Positions 2,423-23,300 of a stretch of DNA of 64,000 nt are shown here, piece after piece. The notes beneath the pieces were generated by a model. It did no database searches. It saw nothing but the letters and a program-made list of their open reading frames with translations, and had not been told where the DNA came from. Position 1 is the stretch's first letter. Each line of letters starts with the position of its first letter. The stretch covers positions 6,681 to 70,680 of the forward strand of contig NIVC01000836.1 of assembly GCA_002269645.1 (NCBI GenBank), given 5' to 3'. This DNA is from Macrostomum lignano. Lineage: Eukaryota. Position numbers and translations under genes: made by a program.

Positions 2423-5400
2423 TTAGCCTGGCTGGGACTGGACATCCCAGTAGGCCGGAGGCGGCGGCTGCTGCGACAGATTAATCGGGTATGGTGGCGG
2501 CTGTTGCTGCTCCTGTCCGTAGTAGTTTAACGGCTGCTCAGTCGGCTTGTTGATCAAGTCATTTGAAGCTGGAGCCAAGGTCGGCCGATTATCATGGCCA
2601 CCCGCGGCTACAACAATCGGTTCTGCTACTTGAACGTTTGAAATTTGTAGCGCCGGATTGGTGTGCGCCACGGATACTGAGGCGCTTTGCGATTGGCTGA
2701 AATTTAGGTGTACATGGCATATTACATGTACACATGATTGAGTCTTGGGCGGATTTTGACCTCCGTTGGTATTGTCAGATTCGATTATGACTACTGAGAA
2801 AAGTATACAAATAAAGATTTGAATCGTAGAATGTATCACATATCGCAAAGATGTCACGAAACGTCTGTGCACACAGAGTGGTGGGAAAGTACGATGTGTG
2901 ATAATGGCCGACTGACAGAGGCAAACCAAGCCAGAAACCGGTCTCGGTATGCCTGCATGAAGTTTGACCCATTTTTTAGTATCACAGGTAAATTGAGTGC
3001 GAATGATTCATCATGTCAGAATTTCTCTATTGATAAGTAGAAAGTATGGAGTGTAGCGCGAAAAATCTATGCAATGAACATACTAGACGTTGTTCAGCGC
3101 TAGCCTAGCTCACACATTGGATGGAGCCAGTTGAGGGCAATATCACACCCAGGTACATGCCATGTACAGTTGTACACGACAGAACTGACGATTTTGGCCC
3201 AAGGACAGTTATTTTACAGGAAAACTATAGCTATTGAAGGTGATCTTCTAAACTATTAACATTAACTTTAACGGTAAACTCTAACTTTAGCTGGTTCATT
3301 TTTGTCACTATAGTTTCCCAAAAGCTTGAAACATTAAGCATCTTCAACTCGAGAAAATGTTTTATGATATAATCTACCTTCACGAACTTTACGCACCTGT
3401 TCTTGTGCCTTTTGTAGCCCTTGTAGCATCGGTCAGCGATGTAGACGCAGACGCAGCAGCCCAGCACCACGCCAACGCAGAGTCCGATGACTCGGCCGCT
3501 GCTGCAATTGACGCATGCGAATTTGTACTTTTACTTTGACCTTCTCGTATCTTAATCTTACTTTAAGCTTACTCATGATTCATATGAGCTTGATCTCATG
3601 ATTGTTATGAGCTTGATCTCGTGACTGTTATGAGCTTGATCTCATGATTCATATGAGCTTGATCTCATGATTGTTATGAGCTTGATCTCGTGACTGTTAT
3701 GAGCTTGATCTCATGACTGTTATGAGCTTGATCTCATGATTGTTATGAGCTTGATCTCATGATTGTTATGAGCTTGATCTCATGATTGTTATGAGCTTGA
3801 TCTCGTGACTGTTATGAGCTTGATCTCATGACTGTTATGAGCTTGATCTCATGATTGTTATGAGCTTGATCTCGTGACTGTTATGAACTTGATCTCATGA
3901 TTGCTATGAGCTTGATCTCGTGATTGTTATGAGCTTGATCTCGTGATTGCTATGAGCTTGATCTCATGATTGCTATGAGCTTGATCTCATGACTGTTATG
4001 AGCTTGATCTCGTGACTGTTATGAGCTTGATCTCATGATTGTTATGAGCTTGATCTCGTGACTGTTATGAACTTGATCTCATGATTGCTATGAGCTTGAT
4101 CTCGTGATTGTTATGAGCTTGATCTCGTGATTGCTATGAGCTTGATCTCATGATTGCTATGAGCTTGATCTCATGACTGTTATGAGCTTGATCTCATGAT
4201 TGTTATGAGCTTGATCTCATGATTGTTATGAGCTTGATCTCGTGATTGTTATGAGCTTGATCTCACGATTGCTATGAGCTTGATCTCATGATTGCTATGA
4301 GCTTGATCTCGTGATTGTTATGAGCTTGATCTCATGATTGTTATGAGCTTGATCTCGTGATTGTTATGAGCTTGATCTCATGATTGCTATGAGCTTGATC
4401 TCATGATTGCTATGAGCTTGATCTCGTGATTGTTATGAGCTTGATCTCGTGATTGCTATGAGCTTGATCTCATGATTGCTATGAGCTTGATCTCATGACT
4501 GTTATGAGCTTGATCTCATGATTGCTATGAGCTTGATCTCATGATTGTTATGAGCTTGATCTCATGATTGCTATGAGCTTGATCTCATGATTGCTATGAG
4601 CTTGATCTCATGATTGTTATGAGCTTGATCTCATGATTGCTATGAGCTTGATCTCATGATTGCTATAAGCTTGATCTCATGATTGCTATGAGCTTGATCT
4701 CATGATTGCTATGAGCTTGATCTCATGATTGCTATGAGCTTGATTTCACTCTTCACATGAGCTTGATCTCATAATTGCTATGAGCTTGATTTCACTCTTC
4801 TCATGAGCTTGATCTCATAATTGTTATGAGCTTGATTTCACTCTTCTCATGAGCTTGATCTCATGATTGTTATGAGCTTGATCTCATGATTGTTATGAGC
4901 TTGATCTCATGATTGTTATGAGCTTGATCTCATGATTGCTATGAGCTTGATTTCACTCTTCACATGAGCTTGATCTCATAATTGCTATGAGCTTGATTTC
5001 ACTCTTCTCATGAGCTTGATCTCATAATTGTTATGAGCTTGATTTCACTCTTCTCATGAGCTTGATCTCATGATTGTTATGAGCTTGATCTCATGATTGT
5101 TATGAGCTTGATCTCATGATTGTTATGAGCTTGATCTCATGATTGTTATGAGCTTGATCTCATGACTGTTATGAGCTTGATCTCATAATACTTATGAGAT
5201 TGATCTCATGATTTTTATGAGCTTGATCTCATTATTCTTATGAGCTTGATCTCATGATTTTTATGAGCTTGATCTCATGATTCTTATGAGCTTGATCTCA
5301 TGATTTTTATGAGCTTGATCTCATGATTGTTATGAGCTTGATCTCGTGACTGTTATGAGCTTGATCTCATGACTGTTATGAGCTTGATCTCATGATTGTT

Positions 5401-8400
5401 ATGAGCTTGATCTCATGATTGTTATGAGCTTGATCTCGTGACTGTTATGAGCTTGATCTCATGACTGTTATGAGCTTGATCTCATGATTGTTATGAGCTT
5501 GATCTCGTGACTGTTATGAACTTGATCTCATGATTGCTATGAGCTTGATCTCATTATTCTTATGAGCTTGATCTCATGATTGTTATGAGCTTGATCTCGT
5601 GACTGTTATGAGCTTGATCTCATGACTGTTATGAGCTTGATCTCATGATTGTTATGAGCTTGATCTCGTGACTGTTATGAGCTTGATCTCATGATTGTTA
5701 TGAGCTTGATCTCGTGACTGTTATGAACTTGATCTCATGATTGCTATGAGCTTGATCTCATGATTGCTATGAGCTTGATCTCGTGACTGTTATGAGCTTG
5801 ATCTCATGATTGCTATGAGCTTGATCTCGTGATTGTTATGAGCTTGATCTCGTGATTGCTATGAGCTTGATCTCATGATTGCTATGAGCTTGATCTCGTG
5901 ACTGTTATGAGCTTGATCTCATGATTGTTATGAGCTTGATCTCATGATTGTTATGAGCTTGATCTCGTGATTGTTATGAGCTTGATCTCATGATTGCTAT
6001 GAGCTTGATCTCGTGATTGTTATGAGCTTGATCTCGTGATTGCTATGAGCTTGATCTCATGATTGCTATGAGCTTGATCTCATGACTGTTATGAGCTTGA
6101 TCTCATGATTGTTATGAGCTTGATCTCATGATTGTTATGAGCTTGATCTCGTGATTGTTATGAGCTTGATCTCATGATTGCTATGAGCTTGATCTCATGA
6201 TTGTTATGAGCTTGATCTCGTGATTGCTATGAGCTTGATCTCATGATTGCTATGAGCTTGATTTCACTCTTCACATGAGCTTGATCTCATAATTGCTATG
6301 AGCTTGATTTCACTCTTCTCATGAGCTTGATCTCATAATTGTTATGAGCTTGATTTCACTCTTCTCATGAGCTTGATCTCATGATTGTTATGAGCTTGAT
6401 CTCGTGACTGTTATGAGCTTGATCTCATGATTGTTATGAGCTTGATCTCGTGACTGTTTGAGCTTGATCTCATGATTCATATGAGCTTGATCTCATGATT
6501 GTTATGAGCTTGATCTCGTGACTGTTATGAGCTTGATCTCATGATTGTTATGAGCTTGATCTCATGATTGTTATGAGCTTGATCTCGTGACTGTTATGAG
6601 CTTGATCTCATGATTGTTATGAGCTTGATCTCATGATTGTTATGAGCTTGATCTCGTGATTGTTATGAGCTTGATCTCGTGACTGTTATGAGCTTGATCT
6701 CATGACTGTTATGAGCTTGATCTCATGATTGTTATGAGCTTGATCTCGTGACTGTTATGAACTTGATCTCATGATTGCTATGAGCTTGATCTCGTGATTG
6801 CTATGAGCTTGATCTCGTGATTGTTATGAGCTTGATCTCATGATTGCTATGAGCTTGATCTCATGATTGTTATGAGCTTGATCTCATGATTGCTATGAGC
6901 TTGATCTCATGATTGCTATGAGCTTGATCTCATGATTGCTATAAGCTTGATCTCATGATTGCTATGAGCTTGATCTCATGATTGTTATGAGCTTGATCTC
7001 ATGATTGCTATGAGCTTGATCTCATGATTGCTATGAGCTTGATCTCATGATTGTTATGAGCTTGATCTCATGATTGCTATGAGCTTGATCTCATGATTGC
7101 TATAAGCTTGATCTCATGATTGCTATGAGCTTGATCTCATGATTGCTATGAGCTTGATCTCATGATTGCTATGAGCTTGATTTCACTCTTCACATGAGCT
7201 TGATCTCATAATTGCTATGAGCTTGATTTCACTCTTCTCATGAGCTTGATCTCATAATTGTTATGAGCTTGATTTCACTCTTCTCATGAGCTTGATCTCA
7301 TGATTGTTATGAGCTTGATCTCATGATTGTTATGAGCTTGATCTCATGATTGTTATGAGCTTGATCTCATGATTGCTATGAGCTTGATTTCACTCTTCAC
7401 ATGAGCTTGATCTCATAATTGCTATGAGCTTGATTTCACTCTTCTCATGAGCTTGATCTCATAATTGTTATGAGCTTGATTTCACTCTTCTCATGAGCTT
7501 GATCTCATGATTGTTATGAGCTTGATCTCATGATTGTTATGAGCTTGATCTCATGACTGTTATGAGCTTGATTTCACTCTTCACATGAGCTTGATCTCAT
7601 AATTGCTATGAGCTTGATTTCACTCTTCTCATGAGCTTGATCTCATAATTGTTATGAGCTTGATTTCACTCTTCTCATGAGCTTGATCTCATGATTGTTA
7701 TGAGCTTGATCTCATGATTGTTATGAGCTTGATCTCATGATTGTTATGAGCTTGATCTCATGATTGTTATGAGCTTGATCTCATGACTGTTATGAGCTTG
7801 ATTTCACTCTTCACATGAGCTTGATCTCATAATTGCTATGAGCTTGATTTCACTCTTCTCATGAGCTTGATCTCATAATTGTTATGAGCTTGATTTCACT
7901 CTTCTCATGAGCTTGATCTCATGATTGTTATGAGCTTGATCTCATGATTGTTATGAGCTTGATCTCATGATTGTTATGAGCTTGATCTCATGATTGTTAT
8001 GAGCTTGATCTCATGACTGTTATGAGTTTGATCTCATGATTCCTATGAGCTTGATCTCATGATTTTTATGAGCTTGATCACATTATTCTTATGAGCTTGA
8101 TCTCATGATTGTTATGAGCTTGATCTCATGATTTTTTTGAGCTTGATCTCATGATTCTTATGAGCTTGATCTCATGACTTTTATGAGCTTGATCTCATGA
8201 TTTTTATGAGCTTGATCTCATGATTCTTATGAGCTTGATCTCATGACTTTTATGAGCTTGATCTCATGATTTGCCAGCAACTCACTCCTCCCAGAAGCTG
8301 CAGCACCTCTGTCCATCCTCCTCCCCGCAGCAGTACACCTGGTCCTCCCGGCCCGGCTCGATCGGGCACACGAACAGGCCATAGACAGTTCGGTTCCGGT

Positions 8401-9739
8401 AGAGCCACGGCTCCACCACAGAGCTGTTGTGCTCAGCCGGCAGGTCGTCAATCACGTTGAAGCAGAGGGTGGCGCTGTCGGAGTAGTCAGAGTGGCGTCT
8501 CCGCCAGTGCCAGGAGGAGAAGAAGATGCCGCTGGTGTAGGCGCGCCTGTTCACGCGGTAGCTGACATAGTTGGGGGAGGGGGTGTACAGGGGGTAGTCA
8601 CGACTATATTTAGCTTTCAAAGATAACCTAATTTAGGACGGGAAACTTCGTTTCTTAGAAAGTCATGAATGTTGGTTCTAAGCGTCCTTTCCGTGACTGG
8701 CCATTTTTATTGTTTCATTAAAGTGAAATTCAAATACTTTTCAAGAAACTATAATTGTCACGTCCTTTGCTTTTACGAGTACACAGGCCATCCTGCGTTA
8801 CAGGTGTTTAAGATTCGAACTCACGAGAATCGTTTGCTGACCAGTAGAGACATAGTGCTGTAGCCACTGCCTCTAGAAGAGCCATAGCGACCGCTGCTCC
8901 TACTGCCGCTGTACCTACTGCTGTACCTGCCGCCGCTGAACCTGCCACCGCCTCTGGCACCTGAGCTGCTACCGGCTGCGTGTGATCGAGGAGAGGCGAT
9001 TTTAATCATGACAATCTACCTGACTCACTGCATGACAATCTACCTGACTCACTGCATGACAATCTACCTGACTCACTGCATGACAATCTACCTGACTCAC
9101 TGCATGACAATCTACCTGACTCACTGCATGACAATCTACCTGACTCACTGCATGACAATCTACCTGACTCACTGCATGACAATCTACCTGACTCACTGCA
9201 TGACAATCTACCTGACTCACTGCATGACAATCTACCTGACTCACTGCATGACAATCTACCTGACTCACTGCATGACAATCTACCTGACTCACTGCATGAC
9301 AATCTACCTGACTCACTGCATGACAATCTACCTGACTCACTGCATGACAATCTACCTGACTCACTGCATGACAATCTACCTGACTCACTGCATGACAATC
9401 TACCTGACTCACTGCATGACAATCTACCTGACTCACTGCATGACAATCTACCTGACTCACTGCATGACAATCTACCTGACTCACTGCATGACAATCTACC
9501 TGACCCACTGCATGACAATCTACCTGACACACTTCATGACAATCTACCTGAATCACTGCATGACAATCTACCTGACTCACTGCATGACAATCTACCTGAA
9601 ACTGCATATCTATCTACCTGATACTGTACTACAATTCTGTGCACATTAAAGAACCTGGAACAACCGCAGCAACTGGAATCTTACCAATAGCCAGCAGAAG
9701 AATGAGGACAATAAGACAGTTGATAAGCTCCAGTTTCAT
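2423..9739 (-). CDS. Paralog A: type-I membrane protein, CX/Shisa-like six-cysteine family (286 aa, 5 exons)
   Basis: Exons 9739-9685 (MKLELINCLIVLILLLAI, signal peptide), 8975-8825 (G/S/R-rich), 8561-8286 (W-x-W...LC...NRT...FVCP...YCCG...RCCSFWE), 3501-3397 (TM SGRVIGLCVGVVLGCCVCVYIA plus basic stop-transfer), 2696-2423 (tail with PPPY and PPAY). All introns GT-AG, phases 1,2,2,2, one open frame of 861 nt. Confidence 0.88.
3572..8271. repeat. 23-bp minisatellite (TATGAGCTTGATCTCATGATTGT)n, about 200 units, in intron 3 of paralog A
   Basis: Direct inspection; variant units (GTGAC, GCT, TTTCACTCTTC) recur in blocks. Confidence 0.97.
9008..9600. repeat. 24-bp minisatellite (ATGACAATCTACCTGACTCACTGC)n, about 25 units, in intron 1 of paralog A
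   Basis: Near-perfect units that degenerate only at the right edge; each perfect unit contains TGACTCA. Confidence 0.97.
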
Positions 9740-10384
9740 GTTTTACGATCAGCAAACAATCTTTGCCACACTGCAATCTTCAGCTTTGCTGAACTCTAAA
9801 AAGGAAAAAAAAGTTCTTCACTCAACTACTTGTATGGGACACCTCCCTGCCCTCTTCAGCAATTCTATAGCGGGGAAGGGGCAGAATCGATAATGGCTGC
9901 TCTGTCCCCTGGGGTGAGAGTTATAGAGCTGTTGTCATGACAACGGAGTCGCCCTCCCCTCTCACTGCACTCTCGTCCTCCTGGTTTCTCTCCACGTCTC
10001 ACTCGCTGTCCTTCCCTGTTCCCCAAAATAAAATGGGAGTACAAAAACGCGAAATAATACATTTACAAAAGACTTAACGCTTTAACGAACATTATATTTT
10101 TTTTCGTTGATTTAATCTACCTTACTAAAAAATATGGTTTCTTTTCACAGAGACAGCGCTATGCAAATGCTGCTAAGCCAATGGGAGAAGCAAGTTTGGT
10201 TTTTGATTTGAGCGATAAGACACGGCTGGAAAGGGAAGGAGTTTTAAAATAAAGCACAAAAATTAGCGTACGACTGAATATTTTTTAAATACAAAAGTGA
10301 TACACGAGGCTAAATTATATATTCGAGCCTGATGCTACTGCAACTTGACTCTCAAACTATAGTTCAGATCACCGAGGATCGTTG

Positions 10385-11525
10385 GGGACCTCTGAGGATT
10401 ATTGGGGATCTCTATGAAATTTCTTTGAGAATCTCTGAAGATCTCTGAGGATCTCTGAAGATCTCTGAGGATCTCTGAGGATCTCTAAAGATCTCTGAGG
10501 ATCTCTGAAGTTCTCTGAGGATCTCTGAAGATCTCTGAGGATCTCTGAAGATCTATGGGAATCTTTGAGGATCTCTGAAGATCTCTGAGGATCTCTGAAG
10601 ATCTCTGAGGATCTCTGAAGATCTCTGAGGATCTCTGAAGATCTCTGAGGATCTCTGAAGATCTCTGAGGATCTCTGAAGATCTCTGAGGATCTCTGAAG
10701 ATCTATGGGAATCTTTGAGGATCTCTGAAGATCTATGGGAATCTTTGAGGATCTCTGAAGATCTCTGAGGATCTCTGAAGATCTCTGAGGATCTCTGAGG
10801 ATCTCTGAAGATCTCTGAGGATCTCTGAAGATCTCTGAGGATCTCTGAAGATCTCTGAGGATCTCTGAAGATCTATGGGAATCTTTGAGGATCTCTGAAG
10901 ATCTATGGGAATCTTTGAGGATCTCTGAAGATCTCTGAGGATCTCTGAAGATCTCTGAGGATCTCTGAGGATCTCTGAAGATCTCTGAGGATCTCTGAAG
11001 ATCTCTGAGGATCTCTGAAGATCTCTGAGGATCTCTGAAGATCTATGGGAATCTTTGAGGATCTCATATATTTCTAGAGATATCTCTAAGGATCGCTAGG
11101 TATCTCTGGGGATCTCAAATATTTCTAGAGATATCTAAGGATCGCTAGGGATGTCTGGCGATCTCATATATTTCTGGGGATATCTAAGCATCGCTAGGGA
11201 TCTCTGGGGATTTTTTGGGGTCTCTAGGTATCTCTGGGGATCTCAAATATTTCTAGCGATATCTGAGGATCGCTAGGGATCTCTGGGGATTTTTTGGGGG
11301 TTTCTAGGGATCTCTGGGGATCTCAAATATTTCTAGGGATATCTAAAGATCGCTAGGGATGTCTGGCGATCTCAAATATTTCTGGGGATATCTAAGGATC
11401 GCTAGAGATCTCTGGGGATTTTTTGGGGGTCTCTAGGGATCTCTGGGGATCTCAAATATTTCTAGGGATATCTAAAGATCTCGAGAATATTTGGGTAACT
11501 CTGAGAATCTCTGAGGATCTCTGAG
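10385..11525. repeat. 10/20-bp minisatellite (GAGGATCTCTGAAGATCTCT)n grading into related longer units
   Basis: Direct inspection; lies between paralogs A and B. Confidence 0.93.
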
Positions 11526-11668: not shown

Positions 11669-14600
11669 TCATCTCCGACTAACCGCCCAGTAAGGAGGCG
11701 GCGGCGTGGTGGGTTGTAGCGGATAATCGCCATCCATCTGCTGGCGCCGCTGCCTCTCGTCCCACATCTCCTCTAGCACTGTGTCGTATCTTGGCGGAGA
11801 TTCTGGTTTGTCATCTTGAGCTGCTTCTGGTGCTGCTGCTGCAGACGATGATGATGAAGCTGCTGCTGCACCAGCTTCAGCTGCAGCCGCTGGTTGCTCT
11901 GCTGTGGCACCTGGATTGCCTCCAGCACCTGCCGAATGCTCTTCGACTTGGTTTCTGCGCGAAGAAGATGATTATTTATGACACATGCATGCGGTACGAG
12001 TAGTATGGATCATTCCTGCCTCTAAATTCTGTCTCAAAGTTAAATATCAAAAAAATTCCCTGTAAATTATGCTTTTAGAAGCTCTTAACTTCAAACTTCT
12101 TGTACATGTACTAACCAACTTCCAAAAGCTTAAAAGATGCCTAACTTCATATTCCTCCAAGCTAAACATTCCCCAAGCTAAACATTCTCCAAGTTAAACA
12201 TTCCCCAAGCTAAACATTCCCCAAGTTAAACATTCCCCTAGCTATAAACATTTCCCAACTTCATACTTCACTATCAAGTTTTAAAATATCCCAAAAATTT
12301 GGTCAGTTTACAACCAAGGACCACTAGGAACTCTTCGATGTAGTCTAGTCTGTCTAGTCTAGTAGTCCTTGGTTGGAAATTTTACGAACCTTCTGACGCC
12401 GCGGGACCTGACGCAGGCCTGCCAAAGGCGGATCGAAGCCACGAAACCGGAGGCCAAACCGCACACCAAGCCGAAGGTTGCCGAAGCGACCCGGGACGCG
12501 CTGGGTGGTTGGGTGGAATCAAGTGTGAGTCAAGTGTGAGTCAACTATGAGTCAAATGTGAGGAAACTGTGAGTCAACTATGAGTCAAATGTGAGGAAAC
12601 TGTGAGTCAACTATGAATCAGGTGTGAGTCAAATGTCAGTCAACTATGAATCAAGTGTGAGTCAACTATGAGTTAAGTGTGAGTCAATGTGAGTCAAGTG
12701 TAAGTCAAGTGTGAGTCAACTATGAATCAAGTGTGAGTCAAGTGTGAATCAAATGTGGGTCAACTGTGAGTCAACTATGAGTCAACTATGATTCAGATAT
12801 GAGTTTAGTCTAGTGTAAGATAGCTCTGAACTCACTCCTCCCAGAAGCTGCAGCACCTCTGTCCATCCTCCTCCCCGCAGCAGTTCACCTGGTCCTCCCG
12901 GCCCGGCTCGATCGGGCAGACGAACAGGCCATAGACAGTTCGGTTCCGGTAGAGCCACGGCTCCACCACAGAGCTGTTGTGCTCAGCCGGCAGGTCGTCA
13001 ATCACGTTGAAGCAGAGGGTGGCGCTGTCGGAGTAGTCAGAGTGGCGTCTCCGCCAGTGCCAGGTGGAGAAGAAGATGCCGCTGGTGTAGGCGCGCCTGT
13101 TCACGCGGTAACTGTAAGGAGGGGGGAGAGCAGGGCAGCTCAGCGGTACGGGGGTTCGATTCCGTGCGCAACCACAAACAGTTGGCCAGGCGGTTGTAAT
13201 GCAATTCGCAACCATGAGGGCCAGCCCCCAAGGCACAGAGAGTGTACATGCCTGACGATTAGAAAGTCAGGGCTGCTGTAAACCCTGTGTGAGCGTGTGT
13301 ATGAGTGCTGTGCCTGCGTACAGCATTGGCGCGCTTGTATGCTCAGGAGCCAGCGGAATGGCGGTATGAGTGCTTGTCTTCTAGCTGGCCCCAGTCCCCA
13401 CTAATCCAAGGTCATCAAGCACCCAATGAAGTTCACTCACGGAAATTTGCTACTAACAAACACAGACACACTTCCGGAGCTACGGAAACTGGAGCGGCTG
13501 CTCCGACTGCCGGTTGAGCTCTTGCCAATCGCGGGGCAAAGCATCAGCTCTGCGTGAGTTGCGTGGATGCTTGGGCTGAGTTTTTCTAAGTCCATGATAG
13601 ATGGAATTTCGGGTTAAGGAAAAAAGGAGAGAATAAGGAGAGTGAGAGAGATGAGAGATAGAGAGAGGAGAGAAGGAGAGGAGACAGGGAGAGAGGAAGA
13701 GAGAGGAGGGAGGGAGAGAGGATAGATAGAGGAGAGTTAGAGGAGAGAGTAGAGAGGGAGAGAGAGGAGAGAGAGAAGAGAAAGAGAGGAGAGAGAGGAG
13801 GGAGGAGATAGGGAGAAAGGGAGAGAGAGGAGAGAGAAGAGAGAGGATAGAAGAGAGAGGGAGAGAGAGAGAGGAGAGAGAAGAGAGAGGATAGAAGAGA
13901 GAGGGAGAGAGAGAGGAGAGAGAAGAGAGAGGATAGAAGAGAGAGGGAGAGAGAGGATAGAAGAGAGAGGACAGAAGAGAGAGGGAGAAAGAGGAGAGAG
14001 AAGAGAGAGGGAGAGAGAGAAGAGAGAAGAGAGAGGATAGAAGAGAGAGGACAGAAGAGAGAGGGAGAGAGAGAAGAGAGAAGAGAGAGGACAGAAGAGA
14101 GAGGATAGAAGAGAGAGAAGAGAGAGGATAGAAGAGAGAGAAGAGAGAGGATAGAAGAGAGAGAAGAGAGAGGATAGAAGAGAGAGAAGAGAGAGGACAG
14201 AAGAGAGAGGATAGAAGAGAGAGAAGAGAGAGGATAGAAGAGAGAGAAGAGAGAGGATAGAAGAGAGGGAGAGAGAGAAGAGAGAAGAGAGAGGACAGAA
14301 GAGAGAGGATAGAAGAGAGAGAAGAGAGAGGATAGAAGAGAGAGAAGAGAGAGGATAGAAGAGAGAGAAGAGAGAGGATAGAAGAGAGAGAAGAGAGAGG
14401 ATAGAAGAGAGAGAAGAGAGAGGATAGAAGAGAGAGGATAGAAGAGAGAGAAGAGAGAGGATAGAAGAGAGAGGGAGAGAGAGGAGAGAGGATAGAAGAG
14501 AGAGGGAGAGAGAGGAGAGAGGACAGAAGAGAGAGGGAGAGAGAGGAGAGAGAAGAGAGAGGACAGAAGAGAGAGGGAGAGAGAGGAGAGAGGACAGAAG

Positions 14601-14784
14601 AGAGAGGGAGAGAGGGAGAGAGAGGAGAGAGGACAGAAGAGAGAGGGAGAGAGAGGAGAGAGGACAGAAGAGAGAGGGAGATGCAGATACGCGGTAGAAG
14701 GCAAATATATCAAGCGATCTTACCAGCAGTGATAGCGATGCAGAGTGCCCAACTCACAGCAGAGATATTTCTGTTGCAAAGCAT
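11669..14784 (-). CDS. Paralog B: type-I membrane protein, CX/Shisa-like six-cysteine family (280 aa, 5 exons)
   Basis: Exons 14784-14724 (MLCNRNISAVSWALCIAITA), 13549-13441 (ELMLCPAIG-KSSTGSRSSRSS...), 13111-12836 (Cys domain), 12500-12390 (TM ASATFGLVCGLASGFVASI), 11954-11669 (tail with PPRY and PPPPY, stop TGA). GT-AG introns, phases 1,2,2,2, open frame of 843 nt. Confidence 0.88.
12517..12800. repeat. Short 10-12-bp TGAGTCA-containing tandem array in intron 3 of paralog B
   Basis: GTGTGAGTCAA / CTATGAGTCAA units; 14 perfect TGAGTCA counted. Confidence 0.9.
13625..14680. repeat. Purine-rich (AGAAGAGAGAGGAT-type) low-complexity array in intron 1 of paralog B
   Basis: Almost entirely G/A on the + strand. 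Confidence 0.93.
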
Positions 14785-15109: not shown

Positions 15110-15752
15110 GAAGTAGATAAGGCGGGGTGAGTTCAGATGAGACAATATGAGAGAGTAGATGAGAAAAGGTGGGAGAGTAGATGAGACAGGGTGATATCAG
15201 ATGAGACGGGGGTGTGAGATAGCAGATGAGATAGGATGAGAGAATGTAGAAAACGGGGTGAAAGATTAGCTGAGACAAAGTGAGAGAATAGATGAGACTG
15301 AGTGAGACTGAGTGAGATCAGATAAGATAAAGGGAGATCAGATGAGATAAGGTGGGATCAGATGAAATAAAGTGAGATCAGATGAGATAGGGTGAGATCA
15401 GATGAGATAGGGTGAGATCAGATGAGACAGGGTGAGATCAGATGAGATAGGGTGAGATCAGATGAGATAGGGTGAGATCAGATGAGATAGGGTGAGATCA
15501 GATGAGATAGGGTGAGATCAGATGAGACAGGGTGAGATCAGATGAGATAGGGTGAGATCAGATGAGATAGGGTGAGATCAGATGAGATAGGGTGAGATCA
15601 GATGAGACAGGGTGAGATCAGATGAGATAGGGTGAGATCAGATGAGATAGGGTGAGATCAGATGAGATAGGGTGAGATCAGATGAGACAGGGTGAGATCA
15701 GATGAAATAGGGTGAGATCAGATGAGATAGGGTGAGATCAGATGAGACAGGA
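15110..15752. repeat. 20-bp minisatellite (GGGTGAGATCAGATGAGATA)n
   Basis: Clean core at about 15340-15750 with a degenerate left flank. Confidence 0.93.
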
Positions 15753-16016
15753 GTGTGTGAGAATGATATTAAGCAAGTTAAGTGGGTTTCGTGGCAAGCT
15801 AAGAGTAGGTCAGACTTTCATCAGAATTTTTTTATTTTAAACGCGATTTTGCGATCAAAACGGTCTATGCGATCAAAACAAACAAAGAATGTTATTGATA
15901 CGGAAAAGGTCACTTGCAGCTTTCATGTAGGTCCGTAGAAATTTAATTTATTTGATAAATAAACAAGCAAAAAATAACATGGGTTCAAATGATCAGCTTT
16001 AACCTTATTAGTTTTT

Positions 16017-18680
16017 CCCAATCCTCAGGTGCGTCATCTTCTCAATCCTCAGGTGGGTCATCTTCCCAATCCTCAGGTGCGTCATCTTCTCAATCCTCAG
16101 GTGGGTCATCTCCTAATCCTCAGGAGGGTCATCTCCCAATCCTCAGATGGGTCATCTCCCAATCCTCAGATGGGTCATCTTTTCAATCATCAAGTGGGTC
16201 ATCTCCCAATCCTCAGATGGGTCATCTTTTCAATCATCAAGTGGGTCATCTCCCAATCCTCAGATGGGTCATCTTCTCAATCCTCAGGTGGGTCATCTCC
16301 CAATCCTCAGATGGGTCATCTTCTCAATCATCAAGTGGGTCATCTCCCAATCCTCAGATGGGTCATCTTCTCAATCCTCAGGTGGGTCATCTTCTCAATC
16401 CTCAGGTGGGTCATCTTCTCAATCCTCAGGTGAGTCATCTTCTTAATCCTCAGGTGGGTCATCTTCTCAATCCTCAGGTGGGTCATCTCTCATCCTCAGG
16501 TGGGTCATCTTCTCAATCCTCAGGTGGGTCATCTCTCATCCTCAGGTGGGTCATCTTCTCAATCCTTCGGTGGGTCATCTTCTCAATCCTCAGATGGGTC
16601 ATCTTCTCAATCCTCAGGTGGGTCATCTCCCAATCCTCAGATGGGTCATCTTCTCAATCATCAAGTGGGTCATCTCCCAATCCTCAGATGGGTCATCTTC
16701 TCAATCATCAAGTGGGTCATCTCCCAATCCTCAGATGGGTCATCTTCTCAATCCTCAGGTGGGTCATCTTCTCAATCCTCAGGTGGGTCATCTTCTCAAT
16801 CCTCAGGTGGGTCATCTTCTCAATCCTCAGGAGGGTCATCTCCCAATCCTCAGGTGGGTCATCTTCTCAATCCTCAGGTGGGTCATCTTCTCAATCCTCA
16901 GATGGGTCATCTCTCATCCTCAGGTGGGTCATCTTCTCAATCCTCAGGTGGGTCATCTCTCATCCTCAGGTGGGTCATCTTCTCAATCCTTCGGTGGGTC
17001 ATCTTCTCAATCCTCAGATGGGTCATCTTCTCAATCCTCAGGTGGGTCATCTTCTCAATCCTCAGGTGGGTCATCTTCTCAATCCTTCGGTGGGTCATCT
17101 TCTCAATCCTCAGATGGGTCATCTTCTCAATCCTCAGGTGGGTCATCTCTCATCCTCTGGTGGGTCATCTTCTCAATCCTCAGGTGGGTCATCTCTCATC
17201 CTCAGGTGGGTCATCTTCTCAATCCTCAGGTGGGTCATCTCCCAATCCTCAGATGGGTCATCTTCTCAATCATCAAGTGGGTCATCTCCCAATCCTCAGA
17301 TGGGTCATCTTCTCAATCCTCAGGTGGGTCATCTTCTCAATCCTCAGGTGGGTCATCTTCTCAATCCTCAGGTGAGTCATCTTCTTAATCCTCAGGTGGG
17401 TCATCTTCTCAATCCTCAGGTGGGTCATCTCTCATCCTCAGGTGGGTCATCTTCTCAATCCTCAGGTGGGTCATCTTCTCAATCCTCAGGTGGGTCATCT
17501 TCTCAATCCTTCGGTGGGTCATCTTCTCAATCCTCAGATGGGTCATCTTCTCAATCCTCAGGTGGGTCATCTCTCATCCTCTGGTGGGTCATCTTCTCAA
17601 TCATCAAGTGGGTCATCTCCCAATCCTCAGATGGGTCATCTTCTCAATCATCAAGTGGGTCATCTCCCAATCCTCAGATGGGTCATCTTCTCAATCCTCA
17701 GGTGGGTCATCTTCTCAATCCTCAGGTGGGTCATCTTCTCAATCCTCAGGTGGGTCATCTTCTCAATCCTCAGGTGGGTCATCTTCTCAATCCTCAGGAG
17801 GGTCATCTCCCAATCCTCAGGTGGGTCATCTTCTCAATCCTCAGGTGGGTCATCTTCTCAATCCTCAGGTGGGTCATCTCTCATCCTCAGGTGGGTCATC
17901 TTCTCAATCCTCAGGTGGGTCATCTCTCATCCTCAGGTGGGTCATCTTCTCAATCCTCAGGTGGGTCATCTTCTCAATCCTCAGATGGGTCATCTTCTCA
18001 ATCCTCAGGTGGGTCATCTTCTCAATCCTCAGGTGGGTCATCTTCTCAATCCTCAGATGGGTCATCTTCTCAATCCTCAGGTGGGTCATCTTCTCAATCC
18101 TTCGGTGGGTCATCTTCTCAATCCTCAGATGGGTCATCTTCTCAATCCTCAGGTGGGTCATCTCTCATCCTCTGGTGGGTCATCTTCTCAATCCTCAGGT
18201 GGGTCATCTCTCATCCTCAGGTGGGTCATCTTCTCAATCCTCAGGTGGGTCATCTCCCAATCCTCAGGTGGGTCATCTTCTCAATCCTTCGGTGGGTCAT
18301 CTTCTCAATCCTCAGATGGGTCATCTTCTCAATCCTCAGGTGGGTCATCTCCCAATCCTCAGATGGGTCATCTTCTCAATCCTCAGGTGGGTCATCTTCT
18401 CAATCCTCAGGTGGGTCATCTTCTCAATCCTCAGGTGGGTCATCTTCTCAATCCTTCGGTGGGTCATCTTCTCAATCCTCAGATGGGTCATCTTCTCAAT
18501 CCTCAGGTGGGTCATCTTCTCAATCCTCAGATGGGTCATTTTCTCAATCCTCAGGTGGGTCATCTTCTCAATCCTCAGGTGGGTCATCTTCTCAATCCTT
18601 CGGTGGGTCATCTCCCTCTCCAATACTCAGGTAGGTCACTTCAAACTCTTCAGATCGGTCATCTTCCCAATCCTCAAATG
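16017..18680. repeat. 24-bp minisatellite (CAATCCTCAGGTGGGTCATCTTCT)n with 20- and 23-bp variants
   Basis: Direct inspection; it is the source of the spurious 881/465/372-aa ORFs. Confidence 0.96.
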
Positions 18681-18698
18681 CGATCAATTCGGCCGTTG

Positions 18699-21600
18699 CT
18701 AGGCCGTCGTCGGCGGACCCTTCCGTCGCACTCCGACCTTCCGCGGCGCCGGTGCCCCCGACGACGAATACGAGCACTCCTCAGGACCAGTTGGCAGAGA
18801 AGCCGCTTCGTCCATTGCTTGGTTGCGAGCGCTGAATAAGCTGGCCCGGCTGCCCGCTCCGCTGAATGGGACGGGCAAAATTATGGTTTAATATGCTGAT
18901 AGGTTTTCAGCTGCCTATGGTGAATGAGACAGGGAGAGAGTAGATGAGACAGGTAGAAGAGTAGATGAGACAGGGAGAGAGTGGATGAGACAGGGAGAGA
19001 GTAGATGAGACAGGTAGAAGAGTAGATGAGACAGGGAGAGAGTGGATGAGACAGGAAGAGAGTAGATGAGACAGGTAGAAGAGTAGATGAGACAGGTAGA
19101 AGAGTAGATGAGACATGGAGAGAGAGTATGAGACCGTGAGAGAGAGTAGATGAGGCAGGGTGACAGAGCAGATGAGACAGGGAGAGAGAGTAGATGAGGC
19201 AGGGTGGCAGAGCAGATGAGACAGGGAGAGAGAGAGTATATGAGGCAGGGTGACAGAGCAGATGAGACAGGGAGAGAGAGAGTATATGAGGCAGGGTGAC
19301 AGAGTATGAGACAGGGAGAGAGAGAGTATATGAGGCAGGGTGACAGAGTATGAGACAGGGAGAGAGAGTAGATGAGGCAGGGAGAGAGAGTAGATGAGGC
19401 AGGGAGAGAGAGTAGATGAGGCAGGGAGAGAGAGTAGATGAGGCAGGGTGGCAGAGCAGATGAGACAGGGAGAGAGAGAGAGTAGATGAGGCAGGGTGAC
19501 AGAGCAGATGAGACAGGGAGAGAGAGTAGATGAGGCAGGGTGGCAGAGCAGATGAGACAGGGAGAGAGAGAGAGTATATGAGGCAGGGTGACAGAGCAGA
19601 TGAGACAGGGAGAGAGAGAGTATATGAGGCAGGGTGACAGAGTATGAGACAGGGAGAGAGAGAGTATATGAGGCAGGGTGACAGAGTATGAGACAGGGAG
19701 AGAGAGTAGATGAGGCAGGGAGAGAGAGTAGATGAGGCAGGGAGAGAGAGTAGATGAGGCAGGGTGGCAGAGCAGATGAGACAGGGAGAGAGAGAGTAGA
19801 TGAGGCAGGGTGACAGAGCAGATGAGACAGGGAGAGAGAGAGTATATGAGGCAGGGTGACAGAGTATGAGACAGGGAGAGAGAGAGTATATGAGGCAGGG
19901 TGACAGAGTATGAGACAGGGAGAGAGAGTAGATGAGGCAGGGAGAGAGAGTAGATGAGGCAGGGTGACAGAGCAGATGAGACAGGGAGAGAGAGAGTATA
20001 TGAGGCAGGGTGACAGAGTATGAGACAGGGAGAGAGAGAGTATATGAGGCAGGGTGACAGAGTATGAGACAGGGAGAGAGAGTAGATGAGGCAGGGAGAG
20101 AGAGTAGATGAGGCAGGGTGACAGAGCAGATGAGACAGGGAGAGAGAGAGTATATGAGGCAGGGTGACAGAGCAGATGAGACAGGGAGAGAGAGTAGATG
20201 AGGCAGGGAGAGAGAGTATATGAGGCAGGGTGACAGAGTATGAGACAGGGAGAGAGAGTAGATGAGGCAGGGTGACAGAGCAGATGAGACAGGGAGAGAG
20301 AGAGTATATGAGGCAGGGTGACAGAGCAGATGAGACAGGGAGAGAGAGAGTATATGAGGCAGGGTGACAGAGTATGAGACAGGGAGAGAGAGTAGATGAG
20401 GCAGGATGACAGAGCAGATGAGGCAGGGAGAGAGAGTAGATAAGGTAGGGCGAGAGAGTAGATGAGGCAGGATGACAGAGCAGATGAGGCAGGGAGAGAG
20501 AGTAGATAAGGTAGGGCGAGAGAGTAGACTAGACAGGGAGAGAGTAGGTTAGACAGGGAGATCCAATCATTGCACTCGCTCACCTTCTCCAGCTCAGCTG
20601 TCTCCTGGACCACCTAAACAGCCATGCGGCGAACACTGAGCAGCTGATGCCAGCCAGGGCAACTCCGACAACAACTGAAGACAGCCGACTGAAGCTGCGG
20701 GTTTTCCATACAGGATTCTTCATCAAATTGGGGGAAATTATTAGTTAGAAAACAAAGAAAATAATGCATGTATTACTTACTCATCCCAGAAGGTGCAGCA
20801 CTCCTGACCGTCCTTGAAGCCGCAACAGTACACCTTGTCCAGTTGGTTATCCAACGGGCAGACGTGTAGGCCGAGTACCGTACGGTTCTGGTAGAGCCAG
20901 GGCTGCATTACTGAGTCATTTAGCCAGCTGGGCAGGTCGTGTCGCACGCTGAAGCACAGGGTCATGCTGTCGCTGTACTCTGGATGGGCTGCTCGCCAGT
21001 CCTTTGAGGCCAGAATGATGCCGAGGCGGTAGGCTGTGTACTTGGCTAGGAAGCTGGGTATGGGATTGGGTGGGTCTGTTTTGAAGCTTCCTGATTGGCT
21101 GTGGAGTTGAACTAGCCTACGCCTAGAGTAGTGAGGTGGGTCTCTTTCCAATGGAGCTCTCTGATTGGCTGTGGAGTTGAACTAGCCTACGCCTAGAGTA
21201 GTGACATGGGTCTCTTTGCAATGGAGCTCTCTGATTGGCTGTGGAGTTGACTAGCCTACGCCTAGAGTAGTGAGGTGGGTCTCTTTTTAATGGAGCTCTC
21301 TGATTTGTTGTGGAGTTGAACTTGGTCCAGGGGTATGTAGAGAGGCGAATGATATTATATTTTAGGCTAAATCAGGTGGGTGTTAAAATGATTAATATGA
21401 GTACTGCTCACGAGAACCGACTGCGGATGAGCATTGGCAGCGAGGAGAAGCCGCCGCTTCCGGACGAGCCGTAGCGGCTGTTTTTCCGAGTGCTGCCGCC
21501 GGCTCGGCTGCCTGCGCCCTTCGTACGGGGAACTCCTTTGCTGTACAAGGGGCTCGCGGCTGAAGAGCGAGTGAGATTTGTTTCAATCTGGGGGCTTCGA

Positions 21601-23300
21601 AAGTGTTCTTGGCACAAGCTTTCCTCTTTTGCCAGCCTTCTCCTCTCTCCCTCTCGACCCTCCTCTCTCCCTCTCAATTCTCCTCTCTCCCTCTTAACCC
21701 TCCTCTCTCTCCTTCTCAACCATCTCTCTCTCTCTCTCTCTCAAACCTCCTCTCTCACTCTCAACCCTCCTTTCTCTCTCTCAACCCTCCTCGCTCTCAA
21801 CCCTCCTCTCTCTCGCTCTCAACCCTCCTCTCTCGCTCTCAACCCTCCTCTCTCGCTCTCAACCCTCCTCTCTTGCTCTCAACCCTCCTTTCTCTCTGTC
21901 AACCCTCTCTCTCGTTCTCAACCCTCCTCTCTCACTCTCAACCCTCCTTTCTCTCTCTCAACCCTCCTCTCTCTCAACCCTCCTCTATCCTTCTCAATCA
22001 TCCTCAGTCTCCTTCTCAACCCTCCTCTCTCGCTTTCAACCCTCCTCTCTCTCAACCCTCCTCTCTATCCTTCTCAATCATCCTCAGTCTCCTTCTCAAC
22101 CCTCCTCTCTCGCTCTCAACCCTCCTCTCTCTCAACCCTCCTCTCTATCCTTCTCAATCATCCTCAGTCTCCTTCTCAACCCTCCTCTCTCGCTCTCAAC
22201 CCTCCTCTCTTGCTCTCAACCCTCCTTTCTCTCTGTCAACCCTCCTCTCTCCTTCTCAACCCTCCTCTCTCGCTCTCAACCCTCCTCTCTCTCGCTCTCA
22301 ACCCTCCTCTCTCGCTCTCAACCCTCCTCTCTCGCTCTCAACCCTCCTCTCTTGCTCTCAACCCTCCTTTCTCTCTGTCAACCCTCTCTCTCGTTCTCAA
22401 CCCTCCTCTCTCACTCTCAACCCTCCTTTCTCTCTCTCAACCCTCCTCTCTCTCAACCCTCCTCTCTATCCTTCTCAATCATCCTCAGTCTCCTTCTCAA
22501 CCCTCCTCTCTCGCTTTCAACCCTCCTCTCTCTCAACCCTCCTCTCTATCCTTCTCAATCATCCTCAGTCTCCTTCTCAACCCTCCTCTCTCGCTCTCAA
22601 CCCTCCTCTCTCTCAACCCTCCTCTCTATCCTTCTCAATCATCCTCAGTCTCCTTCTCAACCCTCCTCTCTCGCTCTCAACCCTCCTCTCTTGCTCTCAA
22701 CCCTCCTTTCTCTCTGTCAACCCTCCTCTCTCCTTCTCAACCCTCCTCTCTCGCTCTCAACCCTCCTCTCTCTCGCTCTCAACCCTCCTCTCTCGCTCTC
22801 AACCCTCCTCTCTCGCTCTCAACCCTCCTCTCTTGCTCTCAACCCTCCTTTCTCTCTGTCAACCCTCTCTCTCGTTCTCAACCCTCCTCTCTCACTCTCA
22901 ACCCTCCTTTCTCTCTCTCAACCCTCCTCTCTCTCAACCCTCCTCTCTATCCTTCTCAATCATCCCCAGTCTCCTTCTCAACCCTCCTCTCTCGCTCTCA
23001 ATACTCCTCTCTCGCTCTCCTTCTCCCTCTTAACCCTCCTCTCTCTCCTTCTCAACCATCTCTCTCTCTCAAACCTCCTCTCTCACTTTCAACCCTCCTC
23101 TCTCGCTCTCAACCCTCCTCTCTCCCTCTCAACCCTCCTCTCTCTCCTTCTCAACCCTCCTCTCTCGCCCTCAATCCTCCTCTCTCGCCTCCTCTTTCCC
23201 TCTCATGCATGAATCCTTCCCCGCTAAGCCAGGCTTGCAAAAATTCCTTACCAACTGAAAGCAGCAACAAAATCTGCAGAATTCTTCGAGTTCCAAGCAT
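18699..23300 (-). CDS. Paralog C: type-I membrane protein, CX/Shisa-like six-cysteine family (about 247 aa, 5 exons)
   Basis: Exons 23300-23252 (MLGTRRILQILLLLSV), 21559-21412 (KGVPRTKGAGSRAGG...), 21053-20781 (TLCF...NRT...HVCP...YCCG...ECCTFWD), 20694-20584 (TM LSSVVVGVALAGISCSVFAAWLF), 18861-18699 (short tail, no PPxY). Phases 1,2,2,2. The last exon is the least certain. Confidence 0.82.
18925..20560. repeat. Purine-rich composite minisatellite (GAGACAGGGAGAGAGAGTAGAT / GAGGCAGGGTGACAGAGCAGAT units) in intron 4 of paralog C
   Basis: Direct inspection. Confidence 0.93.
21091..21322. repeat. 70-bp tandem repeat, about 3.3 copies, in intron 2 of paralog C
   Basis: CTGATTGGCTGTGGAG starts at 21091, 21161 and 21231, with a degenerate copy near 21300. 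Confidence 0.9.
21640..23205. repeat. Pyrimidine-rich (CTCTCAACCCTCCT)n array with about 480-bp higher-order period, in intron 1 of paralog C
   Basis: The rare variant CTCGTTCTCAA recurs at about 21910, 22390 and 22870. Confidence 0.93.

What the first reader, a model, noticed from the sequence alone, without database searches (positions are those of the whole stretch)
2423..23300. Tandem cluster of three CX/Shisa-like single-pass receptors hidden behind minisatellite-filled introns
Seen: three same-strand 5-exon genes with identical architecture - signal peptide, basic G/S/R segment, C..C..CC..CC domain with a conserved NRT sequon, TM helix and tail - and identical intron phases (1,2,2,2). 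The ORF track shows only fragments of them. Known: the C*C*CC*CC pattern with TM and PPxY tail defines Shisa-like (STMC6) adaptors. The W...C...N-x-T...F-x-C...CCG...CC spacing resembles by eye the CX module of nematodes and arthropods, whose function is unknown. Inference: a local, lineage-specific expansion of cell-surface adaptors with conserved ectodomains and rapidly diverged tails.
Basis: partly seen in the sequence, partly recalled or inferred. Interest (0 to 1): 0.75.

Follow-up and report, generated by a model that had tools for sequence, protein, structure and literature searches.

The report
Three tandem Shisa-like membrane adaptor genes
Three neighbouring genes of the flatworm Macrostomum lignano encode small single-pass membrane proteins of the Shisa-like family; this is an ordinary lineage-specific gene expansion, one member is already in public annotation, and another may be decaying.

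Summary
Window 2423-23300 (minus strand) carries three 5-exon genes. All splice sites are AG/GT, intron phases are 1,2,2,2, and the layout is signal peptide | basic G/S/R stretch | six-cysteine domain | TM helix | tail. The window is Macrostomum lignano contig NIVC01000836.1. g1 equals GenBank BOX15_Mlig028763g3 exactly. g3 exons 2-5 equal a UniProt fragment. No gene is called over g2 in the GenBank annotation held here.

The family is narrow: 16 hits in 1.84 billion representatives. Members come from M. lignano, bivalves, a brachiopod and bryozoans.

Evidence points to Shisa-like, not to CX:
- 18 of 20 members hit Pfam Shisa_N; none of the listed families is CX.
- The only PDB sequence hit, and the top (non-significant) fold hit, is mouse Shisa-3.
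- The three window proteins themselves stay below the Pfam cut-off.

g1 and g2 carry two PPxY motifs each; g3 has none. The likeliest role is a membrane adaptor for NEDD4-type ubiquitin ligases; this is inferred, not shown.

Two extras:
- g1 and g2 share a 99% identical exon 3 (dS 0.017) while their other exons are about 60-65% identical, which indicates exon-limited gene conversion.
- g2 lacks half of exon 3 on a second contig.

Low novelty.

The parts
9685..9739 (-). g1 exon 1: ATG + signal peptide (MKLELINCLIVLILLLAI), ends in phase 1
   Evidence: identical to P0001
8825..8975 (-). g1 exon 2: basic G/S/R-rich low-complexity segment, ends in phase 2
   Evidence: predicted disordered, pLDDT about 40
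8286..8561 (-). g1 exon 3: six-cysteine Shisa-like ectodomain with NSS and NRT sequons. A possible alternative in-frame acceptor lies at 8603
   Evidence: 272/276 nt identical to g2 exon 3
3397..3501 (-). g1 exon 4: TM helix (VIGLCVGVVLGCCVCVYIA) and Cys-rich basic juxtamembrane stretch
   Evidence: AF2 helix 162-200, block-mean pLDDT 85-95
2423..2696 (-). g1 exon 5: cytoplasmic tail with PPPY and PPAY motifs, stop codon
14724..14784 (-). g2 exon 1: ATG + hydrophobic signal-like segment
13441..13549 (-). g2 exon 2: shorter S/R-rich segment
12836..13111 (-). g2 exon 3: ectodomain, 99% identical to g1 exon 3. It has N in place of the Y found in most relatives in the YCCG motif
12390..12500 (-). 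g2 exon 4: TM helix (weaker hydrophobicity)
11669..11954 (-). g2 exon 5: Ala/Ser-rich tail with PPRY and PPPY motifs, stop codon
23252..23300 (-). g3 exon 1: ATG + signal peptide (MLGTRRILQILLLLSV); missing from the public fragment P0003
21412..21559 (-). g3 exon 2: basic G/S/R segment
   Evidence: equals P0003
20781..21053 (-). g3 exon 3: ectodomain, 54% aa identity to g1, dN/dS 0.45
20584..20694 (-). g3 exon 4: TM helix
18699..18861 (-). g3 exon 5: short tail without any PPxY motif, stop codon
3572..8271 (.). 23-bp minisatellite, 204 copies, fills 98% of g1 intron 3
9007..9621 (.). 24-bp minisatellite in g1 intron 1
12519..12795 (.). 11-bp repeat array in g2 intron 3
13636..14681 (.). GA-rich 14-bp array in g2 intron 1
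18934..20544 (.). 22-bp minisatellite in g3 intron 4
21640..23191 (.). 20-bp minisatellite in g3 intron 1
16015..18676 (.). 24-bp minisatellite (112 copies) in the g2-g3 spacer; it is the source of the spurious 881-aa ORF

Best explanation
The region is a tandem array of three paralogous Macrostomum lignano genes. Each encodes a small type I single-pass membrane glycoprotein of the Shisa-like (STMC6) superfamily.

Each protein has these parts:
- a cleavable signal peptide;
- a disordered basic G/S/R stretch;
- a compact ectodomain with six conserved cysteines (presumed disulphide-bonded), a conserved N-glycosylation site and an F-W motif just before the membrane;
- one TM helix;
- a disordered cytoplasmic tail.

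Shown here: the gene structures, the homology and the tandem, lineage-specific origin.

Inferred by analogy with WBP1L, CYYR1, VOPP1 and Shisa: g1 and g2 use their two tail PPxY motifs to dock WW domains of NEDD4-family HECT ubiquitin ligases at a membrane. They would thereby control ubiquitination and endolysosomal sorting of a partner membrane protein held through the ectodomain or TM segment. g3 has no PPxY and would act without ligase recruitment, for example by retaining or masking a partner as Shisa does for Frizzled and FGFR.

The array arose by DNA-level tandem duplication; the same exon plan is seen in two unlinked paralogues. g1 and g2 have since kept an almost identical ectodomain exon through gene conversion, while their TM segments and tails diverged.

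My confidence in the family assignment is about 0.85. My confidence in the PPxY/NEDD4 adaptor mechanism is about 0.45.
For: Gene models:
- Junctions are canonical and phases are identical.
- g1 equals GenBank P0001 and g3 exons 2-5 equal UniProt P0003.
- The same exon plan SP|GSR|Cys|TM|tail occurs in paralogues Mlig001147 and Mlig020245.

Homology:
- A profile search of 1.84e9 representatives found 16 hits. A second profile search found 29. Named hits come from M. lignano, Pinctada, Magallana, Saccostrea, Lingula, Watersipora and Bugula.
- 18 of 20 family members hit Pfam Shisa_N, best E 1.8e-7. Paralogues P0006 and P0007 pass the gathering score.
- The sole PDB profile hit is 5m0w_A, Shisa-3, at E 0.002. 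It aligns F-x-CP...CCG...YCC in register.
- 5m0w is also the top Foldseek hit for both AF2 models.

Topology:
- There are two hydrophobic segments, and the N-x-S/T sequons lie only between them or in the tail.
- AF2 gives a confident TM helix and a beta-rich ectodomain.

PPxY motifs:
- g1 has PPPY and PPAY; g2 has PPRY and PPPY. A C-terminal PPPP(A)YW motif is shared by otherwise unalignable tails.
- PPxY motifs also occur in relatives P0010, P0030 and P0032.

Mechanism precedent:
- WBP1L binds NEDD4-family ligases through [L/P]PxY and regulates CXCR4 (PMC6991692).
- CYYR1 recruits WWP1 through PPxY (PMC11399591).
- Shisa binds Frizzled and FGFR in the ER/Golgi (as reviewed in PMC5578492).

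Expansion: the M. lignano paralogues are monophyletic and share an insert between C1 and the N-x-T site.
Against: - The three window proteins do not reach the Pfam Shisa_N gathering score: 18.9 bits, 15.9 bits and no hit, against a cut-off of 22.
- The fold matches to Shisa-3 are not significant (E 1.3 and 2.6), and the models are of low confidence (pLDDT 62-63).
- g3 and the paralogues P0006 and P0007 have no PPxY, so ligase docking cannot be the function common to the family.
- No binding partner, expression pattern or localisation is known, and no paper mentions these loci.
- The strongly basic segment right after the signal peptide is unusual for a luminal region. Nothing in the Shisa literature read here accounts for it.
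- g2 may not be functional.
Confidence: 0.7

Rival explanations
1. They are members of the CX module family (Pfam PF01705, described for nematodes and arthropods, function unknown) rather than of Shisa proper.
For: UniProt names P0001, P0002, P0003 and P0004 'CX domain-containing protein'. As I recall it (the paper, Pei and Grishin 2012, could not be opened), CX is placed in the same STMC6 superfamily, so the two labels would not be mutually exclusive.
Against: With the Pfam copy available here, CX does not appear for any of the three window proteins or P0001 at E<=10. It is also not among the 25 families listed for the 20 family members, whereas Shisa_N is hit by 18 of them. Precomputed Pfam tags of the relatives are all PF13908. 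The closest M. lignano paralogues are named 'Shisa N-terminal domain-containing'.
Confidence: 0.1
2. The cluster is partly decaying. g2 is a pseudogene or on its way to becoming one, kept looking intact in this copy only because its ectodomain exon was recently overwritten from g1.
For: - No gene is called over g2 in the GenBank stretch returned around g1. The only public model touching it is a frame-garbled chimera, P0005.
- On the second contig, the g2 copy has a 208-bp deletion that removes the acceptor and 170 nt of exon 3.
- The window copy has N where most relatives have Y in YCCG.
- The g2 TM segment is the least hydrophobic of the three.
- g2 exon 5 differs at 13 alignment positions between the two contigs, against 0-1 for g1 and g3.
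Against: In the window, the g2 ORF is open through all five exons with canonical splice sites. Both PPxY motifs and the tail ORF are also kept in the second copy. Absence of a gene call is not absence of expression.
Confidence: 0.35
3. They act like classical Shisa or CKAMP proteins, as ER-resident antagonists of Wnt/FGF receptor maturation or as auxiliary subunits of ionotropic glutamate receptors, not as ubiquitin-ligase adaptors.
For: The best sequence and fold matches are to a bona fide Shisa, Shisa-3. g3 and two unlinked paralogues lack PPxY, so a PPxY-independent function must exist in the family.
Against: The tails end in QSQPG, VSRR and PPTTA, so no hydrophobic C-terminal PDZ ligand is present. 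That CKAMPs carry such a ligand is from my own knowledge. Similarity to Shisa-3 is confined to about 40 residues of the cysteine core. No orthology to any vertebrate Shisa subfamily is shown.
Confidence: 0.12
4. The models are chance ORF fragments stitched together in repeat-rich DNA, so this is not a real feature.
For: 69% of the region is tandem repeat, and many long spurious ORFs run through the arrays.
Against: - No exon overlaps a repeat array, apart from 32 nt of the low-complexity g1 exon 2.
- There are fifteen exons with canonical sites and conserved phases.
- Two models match public proteins exactly.
- Homologues with the same architecture exist in four other phyla.
- dN/dS is 0.45 between g1 and g3.
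Confidence: 0.01

Closest known systems
Shisa family (Pfam Shisa_N PF13908; vertebrate Shisa1-9; solved domain 5M0W of mouse Shisa-3)
   Same: Type I single-pass protein. It has a C*C*CC*CC ectodomain with F-x-CP...CCG...YCC core motifs aligned in register, an aromatic pair just before the TM helix, and a disordered Pro-containing tail. Paralogues P0006 and P0007 pass the Pfam cut-off.
   Different: - The window proteins themselves are sub-threshold.
- An additional 40-50-residue basic G/S/R stretch and a helical segment precede the cysteine core.
- A Macrostomum-specific insert with an extra N-x-S site lies between C1 and C2.
- No orthology to a particular Shisa subfamily is shown.
WBP1 / WBP1L (OPAL1) / VOPP1 / CYYR1 / TMEM92: PPxY-bearing STMC6 adaptors
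   Same: Small single-pass proteins with a six-cysteine ectodomain. They have Cys-rich juxtamembrane residues (WBP1L is palmitoylated and N-glycosylated, PMC6991692) and multiple PPxY motifs that bind NEDD4-family WW domains (PMC6991692, PMC11399591). g1 and g2 have two such motifs each.
   Different: Only weak, sub-threshold Pfam hits: CYYR1 in 5 of 20 members (best E 0.013) and WBP-1 in 1 of 20 (E 0.0045). g3 has no PPxY. No binding has been tested.
CX module (Pfam PF01705)
   Same: A six-cysteine extracellular module followed by a TM helix. UniProt applies this name to g1, its copies and g3.
   Different: The Pfam CX model did not appear for any member tested here. By its Pfam description (from my own knowledge), the CX family is a nematode/arthropod group, whereas this family is found in flatworm, mollusc, brachiopod and bryozoan records.
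Drosophila CG15760, proposed fly Shisa-like gene
   Same: It was assigned to the family on the same criteria used here: C*C*CC*CC after a signal sequence, aromatic residues at the TM helix, and PY motifs (PMC5578492).
   Different: No sequence comparison was possible with the tools at hand.

Membership tests
Shisa-like / STMC6 superfamily | Six conserved ectodomain cysteines in the order C*C*CC*CC | tested here: met
   g1 C102, C134, C146-147, C155-156, with the same columns in g2 and g3. The C2, CC and CC columns are invariant and C1 nearly invariant across 36 relatives.
Shisa-like / STMC6 superfamily | Signal peptide plus a single TM helix directly after the cysteine domain (type I topology) | tested here: met
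   Hydropathy peaks lie at the N-terminus and 5-10 residues after the last CC. AF2 gives helices 3-20 and 162-200, with block-mean pLDDT 85-95 over the latter. This is a prediction only; no signal-peptide predictor was available.
Shisa-like / STMC6 superfamily | Pro-rich cytoplasmic tail with PPxY / LPxY motifs | tested here: inconclusive
   g1 has PPPY262 and PPAY275. g2 has PPRY239 and PPPY271. g3 has none.
Pfam Shisa_N (PF13908) | Score at or above the gathering cut-off of 22 bits | tested here: not met
   g1 18.9 bits, g2 15.9 bits, g3 no hit. The cut-off is met by paralogues P0006 (23.9) and P0007 (24.0) and by relatives P0008, P0009, P0013, P0014 and P0017. 18 of 20 family members match at E<=10.
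Pfam Shisa_N (PF13908) | Sequence or fold relation to the solved Shisa-3 cysteine-rich domain (5M0W) | tested here: inconclusive
   The family profile finds 5m0w_A as the only PDB hit, E 0.002, 21 bits. Foldseek ranks 5m0w first for both models, but at E 1.3 and 2.6 with TM-scores 0.42 and 0.48.
Pfam CX (PF01705) | Match to the CX profile HMM | tested here: not met
   No CX row at E<=10 for g1, g2, g3, P0001, P0003 or P0006. CX is not among the 25 families listed for 20 members (11 further single-member families were not displayed). UniProt's name for these proteins says CX, presumably from another Pfam release.
WBP1 / CYYR1 (PF11669, PF10873) | Match to the family HMM above its cut-off | tested here: not met
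   CYYR1 best E 0.013 in 5 of 20 members. WBP-1 E 0.0045 in 1 of 20. The one member shown in detail scored 15.2 bits against a cut-off of 31.
CKAMP / Shisa6-9 AMPA-receptor auxiliary subunits | C-terminal PDZ-binding motif and a long intracellular domain (feature taken from my own knowledge of the family) | tested here: not met
   The C-termini are ...QSQPG...AVSRR and ...PPTTA.
NEDD4-ligase adaptor (functional class) | Physical binding of the tail to WW domains and ligase-dependent turnover of a partner | not testable with these tools
   This needs a pull-down or yeast two-hybrid assay with M. lignano NEDD4-family WW domains.

The most novel reading that the evidence does not exclude
The genes belong to an undescribed Shisa-like subfamily, so far seen only in spiralian phyla. 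Its hallmark would be a conserved extracellular Arg/Gly/Ser-rich basic segment, possibly a polyanion-binding or convertase-processed module.

Within it, g1 and g2 would be a 'paired' set. Gene conversion confined to one exon keeps their ligand-facing ectodomain identical, while each is wired to a different TM helix and tail. The same extracellular cue would then be read out in two ways, as in paired immune receptors.
Probability: 0.12. Interest if true: 0.5.

Novelty: new member of a known kind. Interest (0 to 1): 0.25.

Why it matters
The practical value is modest.

- **Annotation.** It corrects and completes the annotation of one M. lignano locus. It adds the unannotated g2, the missing first exon of g3 and a better family label than 'CX'.
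- **Family range.** It shows that a Shisa-like subfamily with a shared SP | basic G/S/R | Cys | TM layout exists in flatworms, molluscs, brachiopods and bryozoans.
- **Experimental access.** M. lignano is a regeneration model with RNAi and transgenesis, so a small PPxY-bearing adaptor family there could be used to ask which receptors such adaptors control.
- **Gene conversion.** The exon-limited conversion between g1 and g2 is a clean small example of concerted evolution restricted to one exon.

Tried and rejected
- **Single-exon word search.** A word-index protein search with g1 exon 3 alone found nothing. The three-gene alignment was needed.
- **Exact look-up of spliced models.** Public ids and in-window exon translations were used instead.
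- **First g1 exon 3 acceptor.** My first choice (8603) adds 14 residues that are absent from P0001, g2 and g3. I replaced it with 8561.
- **Transfer-RNA-derived element at the g2 breakpoint.** The sequence next to the g2 exon 3 acceptor, at the deletion breakpoint, looked like one by eye. ARAGORN found no tRNA and Rfam found nothing, even at E<=1 on that stretch. I dropped the idea.
- **Fold searches.** Both gave Shisa-3 first but without significance, so they are used only as consistency checks.
- **Pei and Grishin 2012.** This is the primary description of STMC6 proteins, and it could not be opened. Statements about it rest on papers that cite it (PMC5578492, PMC6125347, PMC11399591).
- **Literature on these loci.** Searches for the locus names and for PF01705/PF13908 found nothing.
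- **Direct comparison with true CX proteins.** This was not possible.


Full report
**What is there**

The window is eukaryotic DNA packed with minisatellites. On the minus strand between 2423 and 23300, three ORF fragments are clearly paralogous. They share the string W...C...N-R-T...C-P...CCG...CC...FW.

I read the flanking sequence and built three 5-exon models:
- g1: 9739-9685, 8975-8825, 8561-8286, 3501-3397, 2696-2423
- g2: 14784-14724, 13549-13441, 13111-12836, 12500-12390, 11954-11669
- g3: 23300-23252, 21559-21412, 21053-20781, 20694-20584, 18861-18699

All twelve introns are GT...AG, and the phases are 1,2,2,2 in each gene. Each CDS is a multiple of three and ends in a stop codon. 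The exon plan is the same in all three: signal peptide | basic G/S/R stretch | cysteine domain | TM helix | tail.

**Source and existing annotation**

A profile search with the three proteins returned Macrostomum lignano proteins. The GenBank gene for P0001 (BOX15_Mlig028763g3) spans 7317 bp on the 70,680-bp contig NIVC01000836.1, the same length as g1 here. The offsets place the window at bases 6681-70680 of that record.

- g1, with its exon 3 acceptor at 8561, is identical to P0001.
- g3 residues 18-247 are identical to the UniProt fragment P0003, which lacks the signal-peptide exon.
- No gene is called over g2 in the 10 kb upstream of g1 that the look-up returned.
- The only public model touching g2 is P0005. 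It is a frame-garbled g2+g1 chimera that UniProt names a C-type lectin.

So one gene is annotated, one is half annotated and one is not annotated at all. That is weaker than 'hidden'.

**Repeats**

Tandem repeats of period >=9 cover 69% of the cluster:
- 98% of g1 intron 3 (a 23-mer in 204 copies);
- 87-92% of the three first introns;
- 94% of g3 intron 4;
- 57% and 81% of the two spacers.

No exon overlaps an array, apart from 32 nt of the low-complexity g1 exon 2. The rest of the window is 34% tandem repeat. The repeats are therefore a feature of the genome that is enriched about twofold here.

**Family**

Pfam scans of the window proteins give only sub-threshold Shisa_N hits. g1 scores 18.9 bits and g2 scores 15.9 bits against a cut-off of 22; g3 has no hit. 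There is no CX row at E<=10.

An exhaustive HMMER search of 1.84 billion representatives, using the exon 3 profile, found only 16 proteins at E<=0.001. A second profile search found 29. Named sources are:
- M. lignano: two further locus groups, Mlig001147 and Mlig020245;
- bivalves: Pinctada, Magallana and Saccostrea;
- the brachiopod Lingula;
- the bryozoans Watersipora and Bugula.

The full-length relatives share the whole layout, including the Arg/Gly/Ser-rich segment after the signal peptide. They also share the motif C-x-N...N-x-T/S...G-x-F-x-CP...YCCG...Q-x-CC-x-FW(D/E) and then G-R-V followed by the TM helix.

Of 20 family members, 18 hit Shisa_N (best E 1.8e-7). Several pass the gathering score. 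The other recurrent weak hits are CYYR1 and WBP-1, which are themselves STMC6 families. CX is not listed.

The family profile has one hit in the PDB: the Shisa-3 cysteine-rich domain 5m0w_A, at E 0.002. It aligns the F-x-CP, CCG and YCC motifs in register.

The AF2 models are of low overall confidence (pLDDT 63 and 62). They show a confident TM helix and a small beta-rich ectodomain. Foldseek ranks 5m0w first both times, but not significantly.

Taken together, assignment to the Shisa-like superfamily rests on transitive homology and is solid. Membership of Pfam Shisa_N by the curated threshold fails for the three window proteins. The CX label that UniProt carries is not reproduced here.

**Expansion and concerted evolution**

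In a neighbour-joining tree of the domain, the five M. lignano paralogues form one clade. They share an insert with an extra N-x-S site between C1 and the conserved N-x-T. The exon plan is the same at the unlinked loci. This supports lineage-specific duplication at the DNA level.

Within the cluster, g1 and g3 are old duplicates: in exon 3, dS is 0.87 and dN/dS is 0.45.

g1 and g2 are different. Their exon 3 is 272/276 nt identical (dS 0.017), and the identity starts one base after the acceptor and ends seven bases into the intron. Every other exon pair is only about 60-65% identical, and the introns do not align. Selection cannot explain the identity at synonymous sites, so this is gene conversion confined to the one long homologous exon.

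It is not an assembly artefact, because a second contig shows the same thing. That contig, NIVC01000169.1 (L002), carries the same g3-g2-g1 order at about 99% identity.

On L002:
- The g2 copy has a 208-bp deletion that removes the acceptor and the first 170 nt of exon 3.
- The g1 copy has a 1-nt deletion in a GGG run. This explains the frameshifted GenBank protein P0004. It may be an assembly error.
- The g2 tail ORF and both of its PPxY motifs are kept.

Several observations raise the possibility that g2 is decaying:
- no gene call over g2 in the returned stretch;
- an N in the window copy at the position where most relatives have Y in YCCG;
- a weakly hydrophobic TM segment;
- the deletion on the second contig.

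**Mechanism**

The following steps are inferred, not shown.

Vertebrate STMC6 proteins with PPxY tails dock NEDD4-family ligases. WBP1L binds WWP1, WWP2, ITCH and NEDD4L through [L/P]PxY motifs and lowers CXCR4 (PMC6991692). CYYR1 recruits WWP1 to late endosomes through PPxY (PMC11399591). [quoted passage not shown]

g1 and g2 each have two PPxY motifs. One of them lies in a C-terminal PPPP(A)YW motif that is conserved between tails that otherwise do not align. This argues for constraint on that motif.

I therefore favour a ligase-adaptor role for g1 and g2 and a PPxY-independent role for g3. The extracellular basic G/S/R segment is conserved in layout across phyla and is unexplained.

**Verdict**

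It is a lineage-specific tandem set of Shisa-like adaptor genes. One is already annotated and one is possibly decaying, and there is a small case of exon-limited gene conversion. Novelty and interest are low.

Noticed in passing
window 8286-8561 vs 12836-13111 (minus strand): Exon 3 of g1 and g2 is 272/276 nt identical (dS 0.017). The identity stops at the exon edges, while all other exon pairs are about 60-65% identical and the introns do not align. This is gene conversion confined to one exon.
   Followed up: yes
L002 (NIVC01000169.1) 4900-4910 and about 11800; corresponds to window 12939-13147 and about 8292: A second, about 99% identical copy of the whole g3-g2-g1 cluster exists on another contig. 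There g2 has a 208-bp deletion (acceptor plus 170 nt of exon 3). g1 has a 1-nt deletion in a GGG run that yields the frameshifted GenBank protein P0004. It is unclear whether the 1-nt lesion is real or an assembly error.
   Followed up: partly
window 11669-14784 and 8286-8561: UniProt entry P0005, named 'C-type lectin domain-containing protein', is a frame-garbled chimera of g2 exons 3-4 and g1 exon 3. The name is almost certainly wrong.
   Followed up: partly
window 8562-8603 (minus strand): An in-frame AG acceptor 42 nt upstream of the annotated g1 exon 3 start would add 14 residues (RDYPLYTPSPNYVS). This is a possible alternative splice form, untested.
   Followed up: no
whole window: 44% of the 64 kb is tandem repeat of period >=9, with many arrays of 20-35-bp units. 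These arrays create long spurious ORFs, for example the 881-aa ORF at 15989-18634.
   Followed up: yes
window 24394-25968 (-), 42049-42648 (-), 57961-58242 and 58536-59024 (+), 29225-29731 (+): Other coding pieces in the window:
- a C2H2 zinc-finger protein;
- a small protein with a U1/JAZ-type zinc finger (it looks ZMAT2-like to me);
- two exons of apoptosis inhibitor 5 (API5);
- a weak P-element-transposase-like HTH fragment.

There are no tRNA genes and no Rfam families in the window.
   Followed up: partly
g1 residues 21-68, g3 residues 18-66; relatives P0007, P0008, P0020, P0021, P0030: An Arg/Gly/Ser-rich basic low-complexity stretch directly after the signal peptide is present in the flatworm, bivalve and bryozoan members. 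A luminal segment this basic is unusual, and its role is unknown.
   Followed up: no
profile searches: No hit carrying a source name came from a flatworm other than M. lignano, although several hits come from unnamed metagenome or read-assembly contigs. The family may be lost or too diverged in triclads and parasitic flatworms, or those proteomes may be under-represented.
   Followed up: no
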